Below, piece by piece: positions 4,175 to 63,506 of a stretch of DNA of 64,000 nt. The stretch lies in the IMG/VR virus record IMGVR_UViG_3300042923_000601, positions 182,690 to 246,689 of that record. The stretch is one strand, 5' to 3'. The translations under genes were made by a program, and so were the position numbers. Under the pieces are notes generated by a model. The model was not told the origin of the DNA, searched no databases, and worked only from the letters and a program-made list of their open reading frames with translations. Position 1 is the first letter of the stretch. Each line of letters begins with the position of its first letter.

Positions 4175-4501
4175 ATGAACACTTATTTAATCGTTGCAAC
4201 TGGTAAAACGTCATATCGATTTTATGTAGGAGCATCATCCTACAAACAAGCTGTTGAAAACGCAGCTGACACTCTGATTGAATCCGTGGTAGACTTATTC
4301 CACGAGGTCACAGACCCTAATCTTGATCCGGTATGCTACTTTGCCATTCAGGATGAAGATGGTGACCAACGCAATGTATTCTTCCTCTATATCGTTAATG
4401 AGGAAAACAGCGCACGGTATAGCTTAAAGACATTCACTAGAGCTACAGATGCGGTGTACCTAGAGAAAAAATTCAATCTGTTAATTAGGAGAGACGTTTA
4501 A
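4175..4501 (+). CDS. hypothetical protein
   Basis: GGAGGT RBS; first gene after the early motif. Confidence 0.75.
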   Translation: MNTYLIVATGKTSYRFYVGASSYKQAVENAADTLIESVVDLFHEVTDPNLDPVCYFAIQDEDGDQRNVFFLYIVNEENSARYSLKTFTRATDAVYLEKKFNLLIRRDV

Positions 4502-38521: not shown

Positions 38522-38929
38522 TTAGTCCTCCCTTGAGATAGGATATAACTTAATACCACCAGCCTCACCGCGTGTATAGTCGCCGTACCCATGCGGATCG
38601 TCTTCTTCATCCATTTCTTGCATCATTCGAGTGATGTCAACCGGCTTACGCTCAATAGGAGTGTTCTCTTTAATGAGACGTGCAGCCACTTCTCTGTCGT
38701 ACTTGACGTCAGGATCACTAAGCAAAGCGTAAACAAGCGCCTCCGTTTCATCAGGAGTGAGGCCAATTCCTTTGAGAAGTGTCTTGTCTACGGTGTTATA
38801 CTGCCGGATGTTGAGCGTCTCCTCGCCGTCGTTCCAAGTAGCAAAGGCTACCGCTTTAACCTCATTACGGCTATTCGGGTCGTTAAGCTCTGCTACAACT
38901 TTACGTATGTCACATTTAATTTTTCCCAT
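38522..38929 (-). CDS. PC4/YdbC-family ssDNA-binding protein
   Basis: WND....NIRQY....KGIGLT.DE pattern. Confidence 0.75.
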   Translation of the reverse strand: MGKIKCDIRKVVAELNDPNSRNEVKAVAFATWNDGEETLNIRQYNTVDKTLLKGIGLTPDETEALVYALLSDPDVKYDREVAARLIKENTPIERKPVDITRMMQEMDEEDDPHGYGDYTRGEAGGIKLYPISRED

Positions 38930-38972: not shown

Positions 38973-39027
38973 TAAAATACAAAAAATAAGACCGTCCCTG
39001 TAAAAAGAGACGGTCTGTAATGAGTTC

Positions 39028-39741
39028 TTAGGCTTCCTTTGTGCTTTGGTCGCCGTTGAACAACTGTTTAAGATAAGTCACAGGTAAATGGTCATCAGGT
39101 AACTTATACAGTTCCAGTGGTAGTATGCGATTATAGAATAGCAGGAATGCCTCAGCCGCATCATCGACACCATACGGTGTGTGATCTACCATCCTATGCA
39201 CTCGGAGCATTAGAACGGATATTGAGCCGGATTTGATCTTAAGATGCTCTATGAACTTGGTGAGGATTAACCGGCGGTGGTCTTTACCTTCATCCGGTAA
39301 AATAGCCGATATTGTGAGATTAAGTATTGGGTAGTACAGGCGCATGAACAGTGCAAGTTCACGTATACCTTCTTCGATCGAACTAGAATCCATTGGGTGG
39401 ATAGGGGCATTGAGAACCCGGCGGATATAATAATCCGTCTCCGGATCAGCTAAGATGTTATCAAATAGCTTCTGGATATCGGCTGCTTCTCTGCCGAACA
39501 AAGTGACAAATCGATTGATCTTGTCAAGGGTAGCAGTGACGTACTTGAAGAACCTAGGAAGCTCAACCCACTCTACGTCGTAGTCCTTTTCTTCAGTATC
39601 CAGTGCGAACTGAAACATGGTATGTTTGAGGAACATCTTGTCCAGCCCGGGAAAAACGTTACTTTTGCCCAGCTCAGAGTCAGCCCAAATAGCCACCCAT
39701 CCCTTTTCTAATCCACTATGAAGCGCGTATCTTTTTTGCAT
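39028..39741 (-). CDS. divergent truncated paralog of the sigma-like RNAP subunit (putative)
   Basis: KGWVAIWADSELG / YDVEWVEL / LFMRLYYPIL colinear with motifs of 61947..63452. Confidence 0.4.
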   Translation of the reverse strand: MQKRYALHSGLEKGWVAIWADSELGKSNVFPGLDKMFLKHTMFQFALDTEEKDYDVEWVELPRFFKYVTATLDKINRFVTLFGREAADIQKLFDNILADPETDYYIRRVLNAPIHPMDSSSIEEGIRELALFMRLYYPILNLTISAILPDEGKDHRRLILTKFIEHLKIKSGSISVLMLRVHRMVDHTPYGVDDAAEAFLLFYNRILPLELYKLPDDHLPVTYLKQLFNGDQSTKEA

Positions 39742-39770
39742 TGTAAATACCTCCTTAATATAGTCAATCA

Positions 39771-39790
39771 GTTCATGGATATAATATGTA
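39771..39790 (-). promoter_or_regulatory. early-type promoter motif
   Basis: minus strand tacatattatatccatgaac. Confidence 0.65.
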
Positions 39791-39834
39791 GCCCAATTAA
39801 TGTCCTTTTACGTTTACAAAAAATAAACCCGCCA

Positions 39835-40674
39835 TTACTGGCGGGCTAATGTATAATTCAATTTAAACCGAGTAGGTTTCACCATCATCTGCCGAGGCTG
39901 ACTAACACCTCTTAGACTTCGGATAACGCAAATCTTTATTTCGTTAAGTACATTCAGCGCAAGGTCAAGCTCTGCAATCGCAGTCGGTATAACCCCGGAA
40001 TCCCTAACGTAAGCCAGTAGCTTATCAGGTGCCATATTGATAATAGGCCCCGTGTAAGGCGGCATATAATATTCCAAAATATAATGTGCAGTAATCTCGT
40101 TAATCGTGCTTAATACAGTGGGATAAATCTTCTGTAAGAAGTGATGGTATGCCCTGCTATACCGGCGGCGAGGCTGAGCATCAGATGCCCTGGCCAGCTG
40201 CACAAATAGCGGTGATGCCAATTTGCATAGTAGTGCACCGGCGTATAAGTCTTCCAGTGAACACACTTTATCCTTGATCTTGGATGTGAGTAGCGCGTAC
40301 TCAGCATCCAGTTTCTTCTTACGGATCGGGCTATACATAAGCTGCCCGAGTGACATACTCATTGCTTTAGATAATAACAGAGAGGTTCCGAATGCGACAG
40401 TGATTCGTGCAACCATCGCATCGAACTCCTCCTCTGTATATGACGTTTTCTGTGTAATCTCCTTCGACAATTTAGTATAAAGCCGGAGGAGTTCCTTTGA
40501 GGTGTCATGTTGCATGGTGAAATAAATGATGTAACGCTTGAGCGAGAATTTTGATTTACTAAGCGTAATGGATTTACGGTTTCCAATGACCAGTTGATCT
40601 ACAAATTCCTCCACTGTGCGGTCAGCCATAAGGACAATATTCCACGTATCAATTGACCGGTTCATAATTGTCAT
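39835..40674 (-). CDS. truncated paralog of the sigma-like RNAP subunit
   Basis: IIYFTMQHDTSKELLRLY..SYTEEEF..KLASPL aligns with INFLMMYYDEDKELLTAY..TYTYNSF..KIAIPI in 61947..63452. Confidence 0.6.
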   Translation of the reverse strand: MTIMNRSIDTWNIVLMADRTVEEFVDQLVIGNRKSITLSKSKFSLKRYIIYFTMQHDTSKELLRLYTKLSKEITQKTSYTEEEFDAMVARITVAFGTSLLLSKAMSMSLGQLMYSPIRKKKLDAEYALLTSKIKDKVCSLEDLYAGALLCKLASPLFVQLARASDAQPRRRYSRAYHHFLQKIYPTVLSTINEITAHYILEYYMPPYTGPIINMAPDKLLAYVRDSGVIPTAIAELDLALNVLNEIKICVIRSLRGVSQPRQMMVKPTRFKLNYTLARQ

Positions 40675-40698: not shown

Positions 40699-41019
40699 TT
40701 AGTTCAGGACGACAGCGCGACGATCCTTACACTCATATTGACTGTACCGTTTAGCACGGAGACCGTGTATATGAATGTCGGGAAACTCGAACTGTAGATA
40801 CGCTGCGATTTCTTGACCAAATATACGAATAAGGACGTGAACATCGGTCACATTGAACTTCTTTACGATGTCAGCAGAAGCCTTTAACTTGTCATCAAAC
40901 TTTCCTACGCTAATAATCTCTTCTTCACGGTTCTGGAAATCCAGAACCCGGACGACCATCTCTGATGGCTCATCAAATTCAACATTATCAATTGTCATCA
41001 TAACATGTCTCATGGACAA
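40699..41019 (-). CDS. hypothetical protein
   Basis: AAGGAGG RBS. Confidence 0.65.
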   Translation of the reverse strand: MSMRHVMMTIDNVEFDEPSEMVVRVLDFQNREEEIISVGKFDDKLKASADIVKKFNVTDVHVLIRIFGQEIAAYLQFEFPDIHIHGLRAKRYSQYECKDRRAVVLN

Positions 41020-41073: not shown

Positions 41074-41724
41074 TTATCCTTGAACCAAATCGTTGTCGTC
41101 GGCAATAGTTGGCATGTAAGTACTTACGAAGTAATCCTCCATGCCCTTAGCGATTGCATACGCGTCTTCATTGGTGACAGTTGTCCCGTTCTTCACGTAG
41201 TTGCGCTGGATGAATTCCATAAAGAAGCGATGCATTGGTGTGAGTGTGTTGATCGCGTCCATTCGAACAACGTCGGGGATTTTCGCATCACCGGCCTTGT
41301 AATATTCATCTAACTGGTCATTACTGGCTTTCACCAGAGCTTTACGTTTGTCTGATACTTCGCCGGTTGGTACAAGTAGTCCCTCACCGTATACTCCTTT
41401 CACAGCAGTATCATACGCTTTTTCGGCCGCAGGCCAGTTTGCCACTGGTAAATCTGCCGTTGGTTGGGTGACATCAACGCTTGTATGCTGATCAAGGAAT
41501 AACTCTTCTGAACTAAGGTCGATGCGAAATCCAGGGTCCTCATCAAGTGTACTTCGATCTGGAGCCCATACTCTGACAATGTTTGTTTCCATGTCGGTAT
41601 CATACTCAACGCGAGCAATATCGCGCTGGTTAAACGCTACCCAGATACCAGGTTTATGCGGGTCAGAATTTTCTCCGACCGTGATATGGCCTTTTGGTGT
41701 TTGAACTGAGAATTGGGTTTCCAC
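41074..41724 (-). CDS. hypothetical two-domain protein
   Basis: GGGAGG RBS before GTG 41724; the upstream extension in the track runs through a terminator. Confidence 0.65.
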   Translation of the reverse strand: METQFSVQTPKGHITVGENSDPHKPGIWVAFNQRDIARVEYDTDMETNIVRVWAPDRSTLDEDPGFRIDLSSEELFLDQHTSVDVTQPTADLPVANWPAAEKAYDTAVKGVYGEGLLVPTGEVSDKRKALVKASNDQLDEYYKAGDAKIPDVVRMDAINTLTPMHRFFMEFIQRNYVKNGTTVTNEDAYAIAKGMEDYFVSTYMPTIADDNDLVQG

Positions 41725-41764
41725 TATTAAAATCCTCCCTGAGTATATGTGTACTTTGGCTCGC

Positions 41765-41803
41765 AAAAATAAAAGGCTAGTGGCGTAAATGCCACTAGCC
41801 TTT
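41765..41803 (-). terminator. intrinsic terminator
   Basis: aaaggctagtggc..gccactagccttt with A-tract on the plus strand. Confidence 0.75.
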
Positions 41804-41823
41804 ATTGATGCTTTGGGCAAAGA

Positions 41824-50261: not shown

Positions 50262-50303
50262 AAATAGCCCACTCCTATGACGGGAGTGGGTTTCTATTAT
50301 GGA

Positions 50304-50315
50304 AACAGCTACATA
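50304..50315 (+). promoter_or_regulatory. late-type promoter motif AACA-N6-TA
   Basis: aaca-gctaca-ta upstream of the RNAP subunit gene. Confidence 0.6.
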
Positions 50316-50342
50316 AATCGAAGTATAAGGAGTGTGACAACG

Positions 50343-51926
50343 ATGCAAATCCACCGTGCGAGGATTGACCATATTATTAAACTCAACGGTCTAAAAGAAG
50401 TTAAAGATTTGAATATGCTGGATAAAGGGATGCCTACGCCTGAGGGCCTATTCAGTTATGACATCTTTGGCTGGTCTCAGCATGACCGGCGGTCAATCCC
50501 AGCGTATATCGATCTCAAGGGTAAATTCCTTCACCCACTGGTTTATTCTAACCTGAAAGCTATTAACCGTAAGTTTGAATTTCTTGTGTCGGGTACAAAG
50601 TACTTCAGAGTGAACGAGGCTGGAGCACTTGTGGAAGACCCTAGCGGGGAAACCGGTCTTGACTTCCTTTACCGGGTATGGGATCAGATCAAATACAAAG
50701 ACACGCAGTCTATCTTTGGGTCTGAAAGAGTTAAGAATATCACCAACCAAGAGTATCCGGTATGGATTGATAAATGGCTCTTGCTCCCGGCGTTCTACCG
50801 TGACCTTAACTTCAACCAAGAAGGTCGCCCGTCCTATGATGAGATCAACGAGAAGTATATCAACATCATTCGTAAGGTAAACAGCATTAGCCAGCAGGAG
50901 CAGTATGGCTTCGTATCTAATTTAGCAAAGGCACAGGTTCAGCTGATCATCAATCAAATCCATGACGAGATTGTTGATGCTCATGTTAGAGCCAAACACG
51001 GTACTCTTAAGCGGTCGGTTATGAGTAAGAGTGTAACGGATGGCGCGCGTTTGGTTATCTCGGCCCCTAATATCAAGGGTGAACGATTCAACGATGTGCA
51101 GGTTCGCTATAATCAGATGGGCGTCCCACTGGCGGCAGTCTGCTCAATCTTCCACCCATTTGTAGTGTATGGGGTTCGGGAGTTCTTCCAGCAAGAATTT
51201 GTGACATCGGGTAAGTATGGTTACTGGGATGTAGAGTCGAAAAGTGTTAAATACACTCGATTAATCAACCCAGAGGCTCACTATTCGGATGAGTACATCA
51301 TCAAAATGATCAAGAAGTTCATCTACGGAACATCTACCCGTTACGAGACGATTGACGTGCCTCCGAATGAAGATGGGCTTAAATTAAAGGTGCACATGGA
51401 AGGTCGATTTGGAGACAGTTCTAGTGTGACCCGGTTCATGACCTGGACAGACGTTCTCTATCAGGTGTGCGAAGACATCCTATCGGAAAGACACATCTAT
51501 GCCACACGTTACCCGATCGAAGATCATTTCGGTATCGTGCCATCTAAAATGGCGATCTTAACAACCAAGGATACAACGCCTGCAATCATCGGGGATAAGA
51601 CGTACAAGTTCTACCCTGTCGTTAACCCAGACCAGCCAAGTGACAGAGACTTCATCGATACACTCAACTTGCCTTTGGCGTACTTGACTGGATACGGAGC
51701 TGACTTTGACGGGGATATGATGTCTATCATTGGGGTCTATACAGATGAGGCTAACGCAGACGCTCAGCGACATACGATGGATAAGAAGAATATCCTAACG
51801 AACACGTCCGAGAATATCCGGGTGGCACAGAGAGACTTTGTTCAGACGTATTATGCGCTGACGAAACGGCCTAATATGGACGATGCACCTAAATTCAACA
51901 ACCTGTCTAGAGTTGCTAACTTTTAA
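50343..51926 (+). CDS. phage multisubunit RNA polymerase beta'-like subunit (N-terminal/catalytic half; probably virion RNAP)
   Basis: EGLFSYDIFG; LLPAFYRD; ARLVISAP; TRYP; catalytic GADFDGD; AAGGAG RBS before ATG 50343; late motif upstream. Confidence 0.9.
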   Translation: MQIHRARIDHIIKLNGLKEVKDLNMLDKGMPTPEGLFSYDIFGWSQHDRRSIPAYIDLKGKFLHPLVYSNLKAINRKFEFLVSGTKYFRVNEAGALVEDPSGETGLDFLYRVWDQIKYKDTQSIFGSERVKNITNQEYPVWIDKWLLLPAFYRDLNFNQEGRPSYDEINEKYINIIRKVNSISQQEQYGFVSNLAKAQVQLIINQIHDEIVDAHVRAKHGTLKRSVMSKSVTDGARLVISAPNIKGERFNDVQVRYNQMGVPLAAVCSIFHPFVVYGVREFFQQEFVTSGKYGYWDVESKSVKYTRLINPEAHYSDEYIIKMIKKFIYGTSTRYETIDVPPNEDGLKLKVHMEGRFGDSSSVTRFMTWTDVLYQVCEDILSERHIYATRYPIEDHFGIVPSKMAILTTKDTTPAIIGDKTYKFYPVVNPDQPSDRDFIDTLNLPLAYLTGYGADFDGDMMSIIGVYTDEANADAQRHTMDKKNILTNTSENIRVAQRDFVQTYYALTKRPNMDDAPKFNNLSRVANF

Positions 51927-61946: not shown

Positions 61947-63452
61947 CTAGATCATCTCCGTAAAGCGGATAAACTCGTCTTCAACGAGCTTCTCGCTTAT
62001 TTCAATATCTTGTCCGAGCAATTCTGGTTTCTTATGATCGACATGTGACATAGGAGAATTGATCAAAGTCGCCAATGGGACCAAAATCAACTTCTCTGTC
62101 ACAAGCGACGCGGCATCGCTATACTGCTCCATGAGCCGTAAATAGCGAGGAGATAGCTTGATCTTATTGAGTGTCTTTGCTCCAATTTTACGAGAGCGAA
62201 TGGTTGTAGACGGCCCACCCGACAATATAGACGGGAGTAGCACGAACCCTTCGCGTTCGAGGATTTTCTTCATGATGATTACCAGTCGGAAGAATCCTCT
62301 TTTCTTAATGTATTTCTGGTTCTCTGTCCCGTCGAAGTCCTCTGCAAAGAACTGAAGAATCAGGTCTTTCTGAGTCGGGCTTAAGTCGCCGAGATGTTCT
62401 TCGTAAAAGTCAACGTGTTTGGATTTAATCTCCACGTTGTACTTTACGGCTAAACGTTTGATCTTGTTGGAACTGCCTTGGCTGGCGATCAGGATGTGTT
62501 GTTCATCGACCTTCGCAGCGTTCATCTCAAGCTGCTCCAGTCCAGACATCTTCTCGCCGTTTGATTTCTTACCACTTGTGTCAACGTAGTCGCGGACATC
62601 TTTACCGGTTGTAATTTCGTTCCCGATCATTTTCTTAATACCCGCGAGGTTGAGATTGATCATTTTCTGTGTGAAGACATACTTGAACATCAAATCCTGA
62701 ATAACCATCTTAGTTAAAACCGTGGTTAGCAGGATTGGAGTTGTCCCTTTGTGTTCGTTACGCTCCCACATTCTCCCGTCTTGATGGACAGAGCTGCTTA
62801 CCTGCTTTTCTGCAGTCGCATAAAGCTTGGCGTACATGTTTGTCCCGTCCTCGAATAGAGGGAAAAGTGAATAGAAGCAGTTGTAGAGATATTCCTTGAG
62901 TGACTTGTCACGCACCATATCCGCACGCGCCATATAATAATGGGAAACAATGGGAATGGCGATTTTCAGTGCTGTGCTAATTGCCATGAGAATCTTCCCA
63001 TGACGGTTAGTGAATTGTTGAGGATTGTCCTTGTATCGTTCGTTGTTCGTGGACGATTCCAAGTTAACCCGGTACTGCTCATCAACCAATGTTTTGATCT
63101 TCTTGACCATTGAATCCGTGAAGAGGGTGTTGACCAGATCATCACGGAAGCTATTGTAAGTATAAGTCATGTTATTCAGATCAATCAACGTCTTCATATT
63201 GAGGTACGCTGTGAGAAGCTCTTTGTCTTCATCATAGTACATCATGAGGAAATTGATCGTGTCGCAAATCAAGTTTGCTTTCGTATAAAATGATGATTTT
63301 ATGATATGAAATACATTTAAGTTGGGTCGGCTAATGCCAAATACCCTGTCAAAGTCACATACTATAATCCCCTTTGACCCTGCGTGGAATATCCGAAATT
63401 TCGGAGGCCGATCAGGGTTTTTTCGCTCAATACGTGCAATATCCGCCCTCAT
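61947..63452 (-). CDS. sigma-like promoter-specificity subunit of non-virion RNAP (AR9 gp226 / phiKZ gp68-like)
   Basis: 501 aa; motifs FDRVFG, KSSFY, KIAIPI, YAKLY, D.RMW, SGLEQLEMN..D, F.LLPSILS match my recollection of AR9 gp226; early motif upstream. Confidence 0.75.
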   Translation of the reverse strand: MRADIARIERKNPDRPPKFRIFHAGSKGIIVCDFDRVFGISRPNLNVFHIIKSSFYTKANLICDTINFLMMYYDEDKELLTAYLNMKTLIDLNNMTYTYNSFRDDLVNTLFTDSMVKKIKTLVDEQYRVNLESSTNNERYKDNPQQFTNRHGKILMAISTALKIAIPIVSHYYMARADMVRDKSLKEYLYNCFYSLFPLFEDGTNMYAKLYATAEKQVSSSVHQDGRMWERNEHKGTTPILLTTVLTKMVIQDLMFKYVFTQKMINLNLAGIKKMIGNEITTGKDVRDYVDTSGKKSNGEKMSGLEQLEMNAAKVDEQHILIASQGSSNKIKRLAVKYNVEIKSKHVDFYEEHLGDLSPTQKDLILQFFAEDFDGTENQKYIKKRGFFRLVIIMKKILEREGFVLLPSILSGGPSTTIRSRKIGAKTLNKIKLSPRYLRLMEQYSDAASLVTEKLILVPLATLINSPMSHVDHKKPELLGQDIEISEKLVEDEFIRFTEMI

Positions 63453-63486: not shown

Positions 63487-63506
63487 TTGCCTGTATATAA
63501 TATATA
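63487..63506 (-). promoter_or_regulatory. early-type promoter motif
   Basis: minus strand tatatattatatacaggcaa. Confidence 0.6.

What the first reader, a model, noticed from the sequence alone, without database searches (positions are those of the whole stretch)
39028..40674. Two extra, truncated paralogs of the phage sigma-like RNAP subunit: possible alternative-specificity or anti-sigma system
Seen: 39835..40674 aligns by eye with the N-terminal part of the 501-aa protein at 61947..63452 (NIVLMADR vs IIVCDFDR; IIYFTMQHDTSKELLRLY vs INFLMMYYDEDKELLTAY; SYTEEEF vs TYTYNSF; KLASPL vs KIAIPI). The neighbour 39028..39741 keeps weaker but colinear matches (KGWVAIWADSELG vs KGIIVCDFDRVFG; YDVEWVEL vs YDEDKEL; MRLYYPIL vs LKIAIPIV) and has its own early promoter. 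Both lack the last ~200 aa. Established: the AR9 and phiKZ non-virion RNAPs use one sigma-like subunit (gp226, gp68). Inference: this phage has an expanded set that could switch promoter specificity (a sigma cascade for a phage-encoded RNAP) or act as competitive decoys. I know of no description of this.
Basis: partly seen in the sequence, partly recalled or inferred. Interest (0 to 1): 0.85.

Follow-up and report, generated by a model that had tools for sequence, protein, structure and literature searches.

The report
Truncated copy of phage sigma-like subunit
One of the two flagged genes of this giant phage is a real but very diverged copy of only the N-terminal, DNA-reading half of the phage RNA polymerase's sigma-like subunit. 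It may be an undescribed kind of transcription regulator, whereas the second gene shows no detectable relationship to that subunit.

Summary
Both ORFs exist exactly as reported: A = 39835..40674(-), 279 aa; B = 39028..39741(-), 237 aa. The 501-aa protein S (61947..63452) is a genuine AR9 gp226 homologue (E=3e-17 against PDB 7S01_A).

**A is supported.**
- Pairwise BLAST of A against S shows nothing.
- A profile of A plus its only detectable relatives matches the S-family profile at hhalign P=1e-4. Column-shuffled controls reached that score 0 times in 150.
- An AlphaFold model of A, built without any S sequence, finds AR9 gp226 as the top hit among 350,542 PDB chains (TM 0.54, 248 columns). 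All unrelated hits score TM 0.23 or less.
- A matches the gp226 N-terminal domain in size and lacks the finger and the core-anchoring C-terminal domain.
- Such copies occur sporadically, 1 to 3 per genome, in a hypervariable early-gene slot in three of about ten related phages.

**B is not supported.** 23-31% of shuffled B sequences score as well against the same profiles. B has no homologues and no confident fold, but it does carry an early-promoter-like motif.

**Function is inferred only.** The favoured reading is a trans-acting modulator or competitor of the phage polymerase's promoter complex. I found no published description of gp226/gp68 paralogues.

The parts
39835..40674 (-). Gene A, 279 aa, pI 9.6. 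A diverged, N-terminal-domain-only paralogue of the sigma-like nvRNAP subunit.
   Evidence: ORF. AAGGGAG ribosome-binding site upstream. hhalign of A1 against the S family gives P=1.1e-4, with shuffle controls. AF2 model has pLDDT 69.6 and pTM 0.69. Foldseek top PDB hit is 7s01_A (AR9 gp226), TM 0.54 over 248 columns. pI.
39826..39847 (-). Intrinsic-terminator-like hairpin (9 bp stem, T-run) overlapping the A stop codon. It ends the g248-g106-A transcription unit.
39772..39787 (-). Early-promoter-like motif (CATATTATATCCATGAA) upstream of B.
   Evidence: One of four perfect matches in the window to ATATTATNNNNNTGAA. Consensus TATATATTAT-N5-GTGAA was derived. It resembles the AR9 early consensus AAATATATATTAT-(6N)-G (PMC5312081).
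39028..39741 (-). Gene B, 237 aa, acidic (pI 5.8), predicted all-helical orphan. No demonstrable relationship to A or S.
   Evidence: ORF. AAGGAGG ribosome-binding site. Negative results.
38989..39016 (-). Intrinsic-terminator-like hairpin (11 bp stem, T-run) after B.
40699..41019 (-). g106, a small ORF directly upstream of A (25-nt gap). Probably co-transcribed with A.
   Evidence: No terminator lies between it and A.
41074..41724 (-). g248, first gene of the unit that ends with A. Its real start is probably the GTG at 41724, preceded by AGGGAGGA. The listed TTG start at 41820 lies upstream of a terminator hairpin that falls inside the listed ORF.
41772..41803 (-). Strong terminator-like hairpin (13 bp stem) after g216. 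It separates the g216 early unit from the g248-g106-A unit.
61947..63452 (-). S, the full-length sigma-like promoter-specificity subunit (gp226 homologue) and the parent family of A. An early-promoter motif lies at 63497..63504.
   Evidence: Promoter motif.
50277..51926 (+). RNA polymerase beta-subunit fragment homologue (context: the phage encodes its own multisubunit RNAP).
   Evidence: phrog_2986, E=1.7e-82.

Best explanation
Shown.
- The window comes from a 247-kb uncultured jumbo phage distantly related to AR9, phiR1-37 and BpSp.
- S is its gp226-type sigma-like subunit.
- Gene A encodes a basic, all-helical 279-aa protein. It is a highly diverged paralogue of only the N-terminal domain (NTD) of that subunit. 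In AR9 gp226 the NTD is residues 1-264, which maps to S residues ~1-286.
- In AR9 the NTD contains the sigma2-like helices, captures the non-template strand, and builds the template-strand -10 pocket together with the beta-N subunit.
- A lacks the sigma-finger linker and the C-terminal domain. In AR9 that domain keeps gp226 attached to the core.
- A belongs to a small, fast-evolving family of such NTD-only copies. They sit in a hypervariable slot of early genes in related phages: one in this window, up to three in L004, one in L005.
- A's sequence resemblance is to this clade's own S proteins, not to AR9 gp226. This points to duplication and truncation inside the clade.

Inferred.
- A is made in the early-gene region alongside the nvRNAP subunits.
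- Having lost the anchor, it most likely acts in trans. It would dock on the site on the nvRNAP core or promoter bubble that the tethered NTD of S normally occupies, or bind the same single-stranded promoter DNA.
- It would thereby damp, delay or re-bias nvRNAP initiation, as a competitor or modulator rather than a classical sigma.

[quoted passage not shown] Its function is unknown, and I do not count it as a member of the family.
For: S is a gp226 homologue.

A family and its link to S:
- phmmer finds two L004 paralogues (E 1e-13 and 6e-6 in a small database).
- An exhaustive search of 1.84 billion representatives finds only A itself and the L004 261-aa protein (E=7.6e-7).
- With the A1 HMM, the next-best hits among 561 local sequences are all S-family members (best E=4.7e-4).
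- hhalign of A1 against A2 gives P=1.1e-4. With five members it gives 93% probability and 3.7e-7.
- Shuffle and reversal controls.
- In a scan of ~400 ORFs against the S profile, the top non-self hits are the positional equivalents in L005 and L004.

Structure:
- The AF2 model was built from the five small proteins only (pLDDT 69.6, core 75-91).
- Foldseek ranks 1 and 2 are AR9 gp226 chains, TM 0.54 and 0.49. All other hits score 0.23 or less.
- In BFVD the top six hits score TM 0.40-0.60. Five are 488-581-aa jumbo-phage proteins, including phages Noxifer and Yaphecito. One is a 306-aa protein.

Domain roles of gp226, its mobile NTD and its anchoring CTD: PMC9209446.

Length and charge: A 279 aa, pI 9.6; S NTD 286 aa, pI 9.2.

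Transcription signals.

Sporadic distribution in a variable slot.
Against: - Sequence similarity is confident only over ~120 residues (A 44-169). That segment is the 'unique' non-sigma part of the NTD. The sigma2-like part rests on the model alone.
- The Foldseek E-values are weak on their own (0.046 for PDB, 0.014 for BFVD).
- The A1 and A4 profiles do not detect gp226 in a sequence search of the PDB.
- Two of the five sequences in A4 were chosen partly because they resembled A1 or A2. The 3.7e-7 figure is therefore inflated.
- The conserved 2.1bis 'GMW' motif of the S family (W229 invariant) has no evident counterpart in A.
- No data show that A binds the polymerase or DNA.
- The promoter of the g248-g106-A unit was not identified, so its early timing is only an inference from its position.
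Confidence: 0.5

Rival explanations
1. A is a minimal alternative specificity factor. It would be a sigma2-only protein, as T4 gp55 is for host RNAP, that directs the nvRNAP core to a further promoter class. Its acidic neighbour B might supply the missing core contact, as T4 gp33 does.
For: - A spans the whole NTD, which in gp226 carries the promoter-reading elements (PMC9209446).
- The AR9 core assembles without gp226, so the core could accept another factor.
- A basic A-like gene is followed by an acidic ~235-aa gene both here (A then B) and in L004 (261 aa then 233 aa).
Against: - A has no finger, no sigma4.1-like helix and no CTD, which are the elements that hold gp226 on the core.
- The 2.1bis motif is not recognisable in A.
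- The family is missing from most related phages, so it cannot be part of a conserved cascade.
- B shows no similarity to the S CTD or to L004_233.
- No extra promoter class was looked for or found.
Confidence: 0.15
2. A targets the host, not the phage enzyme. A sigma2-like domain could bind the host RNAP beta-prime clamp helices and block host sigma binding. This would contribute to host transcription shut-off early in infection.
For: - A lies in an early-gene region, is accessory and evolves fast: 24% identity between A and its L004 counterpart, against 40-60% for flanking genes. This is typical of host-interaction genes.
- gp226 residues 184-264 are sigma2-like.
- AR9 infection lowers host mRNA levels (PMC5312081).
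Against: - No sequence or structural hit to bacterial sigma factors above noise. The best RNAP-holoenzyme chain among the PDB hits scored TM 0.22.
- The host is unknown.
- This is entirely inferential.
Confidence: 0.12
3. The A family keeps the fold but has been recruited to a job outside transcription. Examples would be binding single-stranded or modified phage DNA, or counter-defence.
For: - It sits in a slot that carries unrelated accessory cargo in relatives: HAD, NUDIX, DUF3850 and Macro domains.
- The motifs known to be functional in gp226 are not recognisable in A.
- A is basic.
Against: The only conserved signal links it to a transcription factor domain. There is no positive evidence for another role.
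Confidence: 0.13
4. B is also a (hyper-diverged) member of the family.
For: - B is adjacent to A and all-helical.
- In a forced alignment, LPRFFKYVTA falls on the family's LKRYxLYFT motif.
- There is a weak 46-residue match to L004_233 over the same motif (E=1.1).
Against: - All statistics are at chance level.
- The single-sequence AF2 model is unreliable (pLDDT 45) and finds nothing.
- B is acidic, unlike A and the S NTD.
Confidence: 0.12
5. The A-S resemblance is coincidental or convergent between helical proteins, and A is an unrelated orphan.
For: - Pairwise BLAST is negative.
- Foldseek E-values are only 0.01-0.05.
- The MSA is shallow.
Against: - Two independent lines converge on the same, a priori named target.
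- Shuffle controls reached the score 0 times in 150.
- The only PDB hits with TM above 0.23 are the two gp226 chains.
- Paralogues in two other phages give the same signal independently.
Confidence: 0.08

Closest known systems
AR9 gp226, the promoter-specificity (sigma-like) subunit of the non-virion RNAP (PDB 7S01, 7UM0, 7UM1)
   Same: A's model has this protein as its best PDB match over ~248 columns. A equals its NTD in length and is similarly basic. A's own genome encodes a full-length orthologue, S.
   Different: A lacks the finger (gp226 265-294) and the CTD (295-464), so it lacks the core anchor and the pseudo -35-binding motif. It has no recognisable 2.1bis motif. There is no direct sequence match to gp226. 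A is accessory, whereas gp226-type proteins appear to be core genes.
phiKZ gp68, the fifth subunit of the phiKZ nvRNAP
   Same: It has the same two-domain architecture as gp226, and its modelled NTD superposes on the gp226 NTD (PMC9209446). A's BFVD hits include 488-581-aa proteins of jumbo phages such as Noxifer and Yaphecito. I infer these are gp68-type, but did not verify it.
   Different: gp68 is full length and is required for assembly of an elongation-capable enzyme. A is NTD-only.
T4 gp55 (with gp33), a minimal sigma made of a sigma2-like part only, with the sigma4 role supplied by a separate protein
   Same: It is a precedent for a phage specificity factor that is essentially a sigma2-containing fragment working without its own C-terminal domain (established knowledge, not tested here).
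   Different: gp55 acts on host RNAP and needs gp33 and the sliding clamp. No sequence or fold relationship to A was found. The resemblance is in how it might work, not in family membership.
Anti-sigma factors and sigma-competing phage proteins (for example T4 AsiA)
   Same: They share the proposed outcome: interference with sigma-dependent initiation.
   Different: Anti-sigmas bind sigma and are not sigma paralogues. A would compete as a mimic of part of the sigma-like subunit. No binding data exist.

Membership tests
gp226/gp68 sigma-like nvRNAP subunit family (gene A) | N-terminal domain fold (gp226 residues 1-264) | tested here: met
   Foldseek top PDB hits are 7s01_A and 7um0_A, TM 0.54 and 0.49 over 248-270 columns. 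hhalign against the S family gives P=1.1e-4, with controls.
gp226/gp68 sigma-like nvRNAP subunit family (gene A) | Sigma-finger-like linker and C-terminal domain (sigma4.1-like helix, pseudo -35-binding motif) that attach the subunit to the core | tested here: not met
   A is 279 aa and ends at the NTD boundary (S ~286, gp226 264). An intrinsic terminator follows its stop codon. The downstream gene B shows no similarity to the S CTD.
gp226/gp68 sigma-like nvRNAP subunit family (gene A) | Conserved 2.1bis helix that forms the -10 base pocket (gp226 V206/I207/Y210; in this clade's S family a GMW motif with invariant W229) | tested here: inconclusive
   No invariant Trp or similar motif occurs in the C-terminal third of the A family, but the sequence alignment is unreliable in that region.
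gp226/gp68 sigma-like nvRNAP subunit family (gene A) | Physical association with the nvRNAP core and promoter-specific initiation | not testable with these tools
   Needs pull-down and in vitro transcription. No multimer prediction was available.
gp226/gp68 sigma-like nvRNAP subunit family (gene B) | Any significant sequence or fold similarity to the NTD or CTD | tested here: not met
   hhalign P is 0.19-0.53. 23-31% of shuffles score as well. The AF2 model has pLDDT 45 and finds no gp226 hit. The fold test is weak because the model is poor.
gp226/gp68 sigma-like nvRNAP subunit family (protein S, 61947..63452) | Full-length similarity to gp226 | tested here: met
   phmmer E=3.2e-17, covering S 32-477 and gp226 19-447. 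phrog_25005 E=5.8e-24.
Bacterial sigma-70 family | Recognisable sigma region 2 or 4 domains (Pfam Sigma70_r2 / r4) | tested here: not met
   No Pfam hit for A, B or S at E<=0.1. Among Foldseek PDB hits, the one RNAP-holoenzyme chain listed scored TM 0.22.
Anti-sigma factors | Binds the cognate sigma and prevents its use by the core | not testable with these tools
   No sequence family hit. This is a functional definition only.

The most novel reading that the evidence does not exclude
Some AR9-type jumbo phages regulate their own multisubunit RNA polymerase with free-standing copies of the promoter-reading N-terminal domain of the sigma-like subunit. These copies would swap in trans with the tethered domain to switch or silence promoter classes. 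A and its acidic neighbour B would then form a split alternative specificity factor, making a sigma-cascade analogue for a virus-encoded RNAP.
Probability: 0.15. Interest if true: 0.85.

Novelty: new variant of a known kind. Interest (0 to 1): 0.55.

Why it matters
Jumbo-phage non-virion RNA polymerases are thought to use a single sigma-like subunit (gp226 or gp68). How they time middle and late transcription is poorly understood. A family of NTD-only paralogues would be the first candidate phage-encoded regulator, or alternative specificity module, acting on these enzymes. In AR9 the NTD is the mobile part that opens and reads the promoter. These paralogues could therefore serve as a natural tool for separating NTD docking from CTD anchoring. 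Full-text searches of about 8.4 million held papers, and reading of the key AR9, phiKZ and comparative-genomics papers, found no description of gp226/gp68 paralogues. The caveat is that the family is small and sporadic, and its function is entirely inferred.

Tried and rejected
**Searches for A and B that found nothing**
- Pairwise BLASTP of A-S, B-S and A-B: nothing.
- Pfam, PHROGs, PDB sequence search and tblastn against 50,697 phage genomes for A and B: nothing.
- The 5.8-billion-protein word-index search with A found only A itself.
- IMG/VR scans with A, B, g357 and profile A1 returned only the source contig. Profile A4 was too diverse to scan with.
- A JGI metagenome scan with B found no relative.
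- ESM Atlas look-alikes for A and B were all below the tool's noise level. The ERO1 hit for B (0.77) is under the stated chance threshold.
- Profiles A1 and A4 against PDB sequences did not retrieve gp226.
- tblastn and PHROGs for the L004 and L005 paralogues: nothing.
- More related loci (L007-L012, L014, L015) contain no A-like ORFs.

**Hypotheses tested and not supported**
- B as the missing CTD of a split gene: no similarity to the S profile anywhere.
- B as orthologue of L004_233: E=0.4-1.1. Adding B gave no gain to the profiles.
- A and B as one gene read through a stop. They are in the same frame, but the 93-nt spacer has three in-frame stops plus a terminator and a promoter-like motif. 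I rejected this without joining the pieces.

**Caps reached**
- No exhaustive search could be run for B.
- No structure prediction could be run for the L004 and L005 paralogues.
Full report
**1. What is there**

- A = 39835..40674(-), 279 aa
- B = 39028..39741(-), 237 aa
- S = 61947..63452(-), 501 aa

The window belongs to IMGVR_UViG_3300042923_000601, a 246,689-bp contig. S is a clear homologue of the AR9 promoter-specificity subunit gp226. phmmer against PDB chain 7s01_A gives E=3.2e-17 and is collinear over S 32-477 / gp226 19-447. The PHROG 'RNA polymerase' family gives E=5.8e-24. tblastn finds distant matches in phages BpSp, LPJP1 and phiR1-37. An RNAP beta-fragment gene lies at 50277..51926. 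This is therefore an AR9-type jumbo phage with its own multisubunit RNAP.

**2. Transcription signals**

A and B are separate genes.
- A 9-bp GC-rich hairpin with a T-run overlaps A's stop codon (39847..39826). An 11-bp hairpin follows B (39016..38989).
- The window has an over-represented AT-rich element, TATATATTAT followed five bases later by GTGAA. It occurs upstream of g216 and of the ORFs starting at 4175 and 56295. The TATATATTAT core, without GTGAA, also lies upstream of S.
- This element resembles the AR9 early (virion-RNAP) consensus AAATATATATTAT-(6N)-G (PMC5312081).
- B has a near-consensus copy at 39772..39787. It is one of only four perfect matches to ATATTATNNNNNTGAA in 64 kb.
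- A has no promoter of its own. It follows g106 after 25 nt.
- The unit g248-g106-A begins just after a strong terminator at 41803..41772. That terminator lies inside the mechanically listed g248 ORF, so g248 probably starts at the GTG at 41724.
- The A-B spacer contains three in-frame stops, so the two are not one gene read through a stop.

**3. Is A related to S?**

Pairwise BLASTP says no (E=1.7). Pfam, PHROGs, PDB sequences and phage genomes give nothing for A.

A is nearly an orphan. The word-index search of 5.8 billion proteins found only A itself. An exhaustive phmmer over 1.84 billion representatives found one relative, a 261-aa protein (E=7.6e-7).

I recovered related phages through the conserved neighbour g357 and fetched their loci. 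In the closest one, L004, A hits two proteins: 261 aa (E=1e-13) and 257 aa (E=6e-6).

The three-sequence profile A1 gave these results:
- Searched against 561 local sequences, its best non-family hits are exclusively S-family proteins (best E=4.7e-4).
- hhalign of A1 against the 22-member S alignment A2 gives P=1.1e-4 over A 44-169 and S 62-182.
- Empirical controls: real score 40.5, column-shuffled 14.9 +/- 2.6 (max 25.7, 0 of 150), reversed 16.0.

A scan of about 400 ORFs from the window and loci against the S profile puts the positional equivalents at the top. These are a 300-aa protein in L005 (P=4e-4) and the L004 261-aa protein (P=1e-3). With five members (A4) the match to S rises to 93% probability, E=3.7e-7. 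That figure is inflated, because two members were chosen partly for such similarity.

**4. Independent structural test**

An AlphaFold2 model of A was built from A4 only, with no S-family sequence. It reached pLDDT 69.6 and pTM 0.69, with residues 45-205 at 75-91.

Foldseek against 350,542 PDB chains:
- Rank 1 is 7s01_A (E=0.046, TM 0.54, 248 columns).
- Rank 2 is 7um0_A (TM 0.49). Both are AR9 gp226.
- Every other hit has TM 0.23 or less.

Foldseek against BFVD:
- The six top hits score TM 0.40-0.60.
- Five are 488-581-aa proteins of jumbo phages, including Noxifer and Yaphecito. From size and host I infer they are gp68/gp226-type, but I did not verify this.
- One is a 306-aa protein of 'Myoviridae sp. 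ctwwN25', possibly another short copy.

The E-values are weak in isolation. However, the a priori named target is the unique outlier in both libraries.

**5. What part of the subunit is A?**

In AR9, gp226 has three parts (PMC9209446):
- an NTD (residues 1-264, with a sigma2-like part at 184-264)
- a sigma-finger linker (265-294)
- a CTD (295-464)

Using the alignment, the S NTD is about residues 1-286. A (279 aa, pI 9.6) matches the S NTD (286 aa, pI 9.2) in length and charge. A therefore stops at the domain boundary.

In AR9 the NTD does three things. It captures the non-template 5'-AACA-3', it forms the -10U pocket with beta-N through the 2.1bis helix, and it is mobile in the free holoenzyme. 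The CTD keeps the subunit on the core. So A has the promoter-reading module without the anchor.

The confident sequence signal covers only the 'unique' part of the NTD. The S-family 2.1bis motif (GMW, W229 invariant) is not recognisable in A. The A profiles also do not retrieve AR9 gp226 by sequence. The resemblance is to this clade's own S proteins, which suggests a within-clade duplication and truncation.

**6. Distribution**

Between the conserved genes g216 and g135/g357, related phages carry quite different cargo:
- This window: g248, g106, A, B.
- L004: two clear A-like genes, plus a weaker one of 233 aa (P=9e-4 against A1).
- L005/L006: one (300 aa).
- L007-L012, L014, L015: none. They carry HAD, NUDIX, DUF3850 and Macro domains instead.

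A and its L004 counterpart share 24% identity, where flanking genes share 40-60%. The family is thus accessory, sporadic and fast-evolving.

**7. B**

No test links B to A, S or anything else.
- BLASTP E is 13 or higher.
- hhalign P is 0.19-0.53.
- HMM scores are -1.3 to -2.2 bits, matched by 23-31% of shuffles.
- No local or public homologue was found.
- Atlas look-alikes are below noise.
- The single-sequence AF2 model has pLDDT 45 and gives meaningless Foldseek hits.
- Adding B to the family profile is no better than adding shuffled B.

One hint remains. A 46-residue match to L004_233 lies over the family's LKRYxLYFT region (E=1.1). Both B and L004_233 are acidic ~235-aa genes directly downstream of a basic A-like gene. 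This is a lead, not evidence.

**8. Mechanism (inferred)**

A keeps the mobile promoter-reading domain and has lost the tether. Its gene lies in an early-gene region. I therefore favour a trans-acting role on the phage nvRNAP: occupying the NTD docking site on the core or bubble, or the single-stranded promoter DNA. That would compete with or modulate S-dependent initiation.

Rivals:
- A gp55-like minimal alternative factor, possibly working with B.
- A mimic aimed at host RNAP.
- A recruited fold with a non-transcriptional role.
- Chance similarity.

None can be settled in silico with the tools at hand.

**9. Novelty**

Full-text searches and reading of the AR9, phiKZ and comparative-genomics papers found no mention of paralogues of gp226 or gp68. 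I rate this a new variant of a known kind: a domain-level paralogue of the known sigma-like subunit. The homology is well supported for A and not for B. Function is speculative.

Noticed in passing
window 61947..63452 (S residues ~225-231): The valine in the 2.1bis helix that makes AR9 gp226 uracil-specific (V206, conserved in dU-genome phages per PMC9209446) aligns with R227 in S. This clade instead has a D-x-G-M-W motif with invariant W229. Promoter or base recognition, and perhaps DNA chemistry, may differ from AR9.
   Followed up: partly
window 4136, 23532, 42558, 56327, 63497 (and the variant at 39772..39787): An early-promoter-like consensus, TATATATTAT, recurs upstream of ORFs. In three copies (4136, 42558, 56327) GTGAA follows five bases later. 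It resembles the AR9 virion-RNAP early consensus. TATATTAT occurs 11 times against 3.8 expected.
   Followed up: partly
window 38522..38929 (-): The 135-aa protein downstream of B has a sub-threshold PC4 (ssDNA-binding transcriptional coactivator p15) match: PF02229 E=1e-4, 22.2 bits against a cut-off of 25. It also matches a PHROG 'DNA binding protein'. It is conserved next to g357 in most related phages. Its upstream region contains AACA-N6-TA, which matches the AR9 late-promoter consensus.
   Followed up: no
window 41074..41820 (-): The mechanically listed TTG start of this ORF lies upstream of a 13-bp terminator hairpin (41803..41772). The real start is probably the GTG at 41724, preceded by AGGGAGGA.
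   Followed up: yes
window ~38.9-42.5 kb; L004 5.8-9.6 kb; L005 8.6-9.6 kb; L007-L009 equivalents: The interval between the g216 and g135/g357 homologues is a hypervariable accessory slot. Its gene content differs in each related phage: sigma-NTD-like copies, HAD_SAK_2, NUDIX, DUF3850 or Macro.
   Followed up: partly
L007 11140..11409: A related 201-kb phage contig carries an 89-aa gene with a Cas_csx3 (PF09620) hit between the g357 and g406 homologues. It could be a phage-borne ring nuclease or anti-CRISPR candidate.
   Followed up: no
BFVD entry A0A8S5PNJ2 (Myoviridae sp. ctwwN25): A 306-aa uncharacterised phage protein is the best BFVD structural match to the A model (TM 0.55/0.50). It may be an independent NTD-only copy in an unrelated uncultured phage. 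Its sequence was not retrievable here.
   Followed up: no
L010 6474..10132: In a related contig the ribonucleotide reductase large subunit is split by a GIY-YIG endonuclease gene, which suggests an intron or a homing-endonuclease insertion.
   Followed up: no
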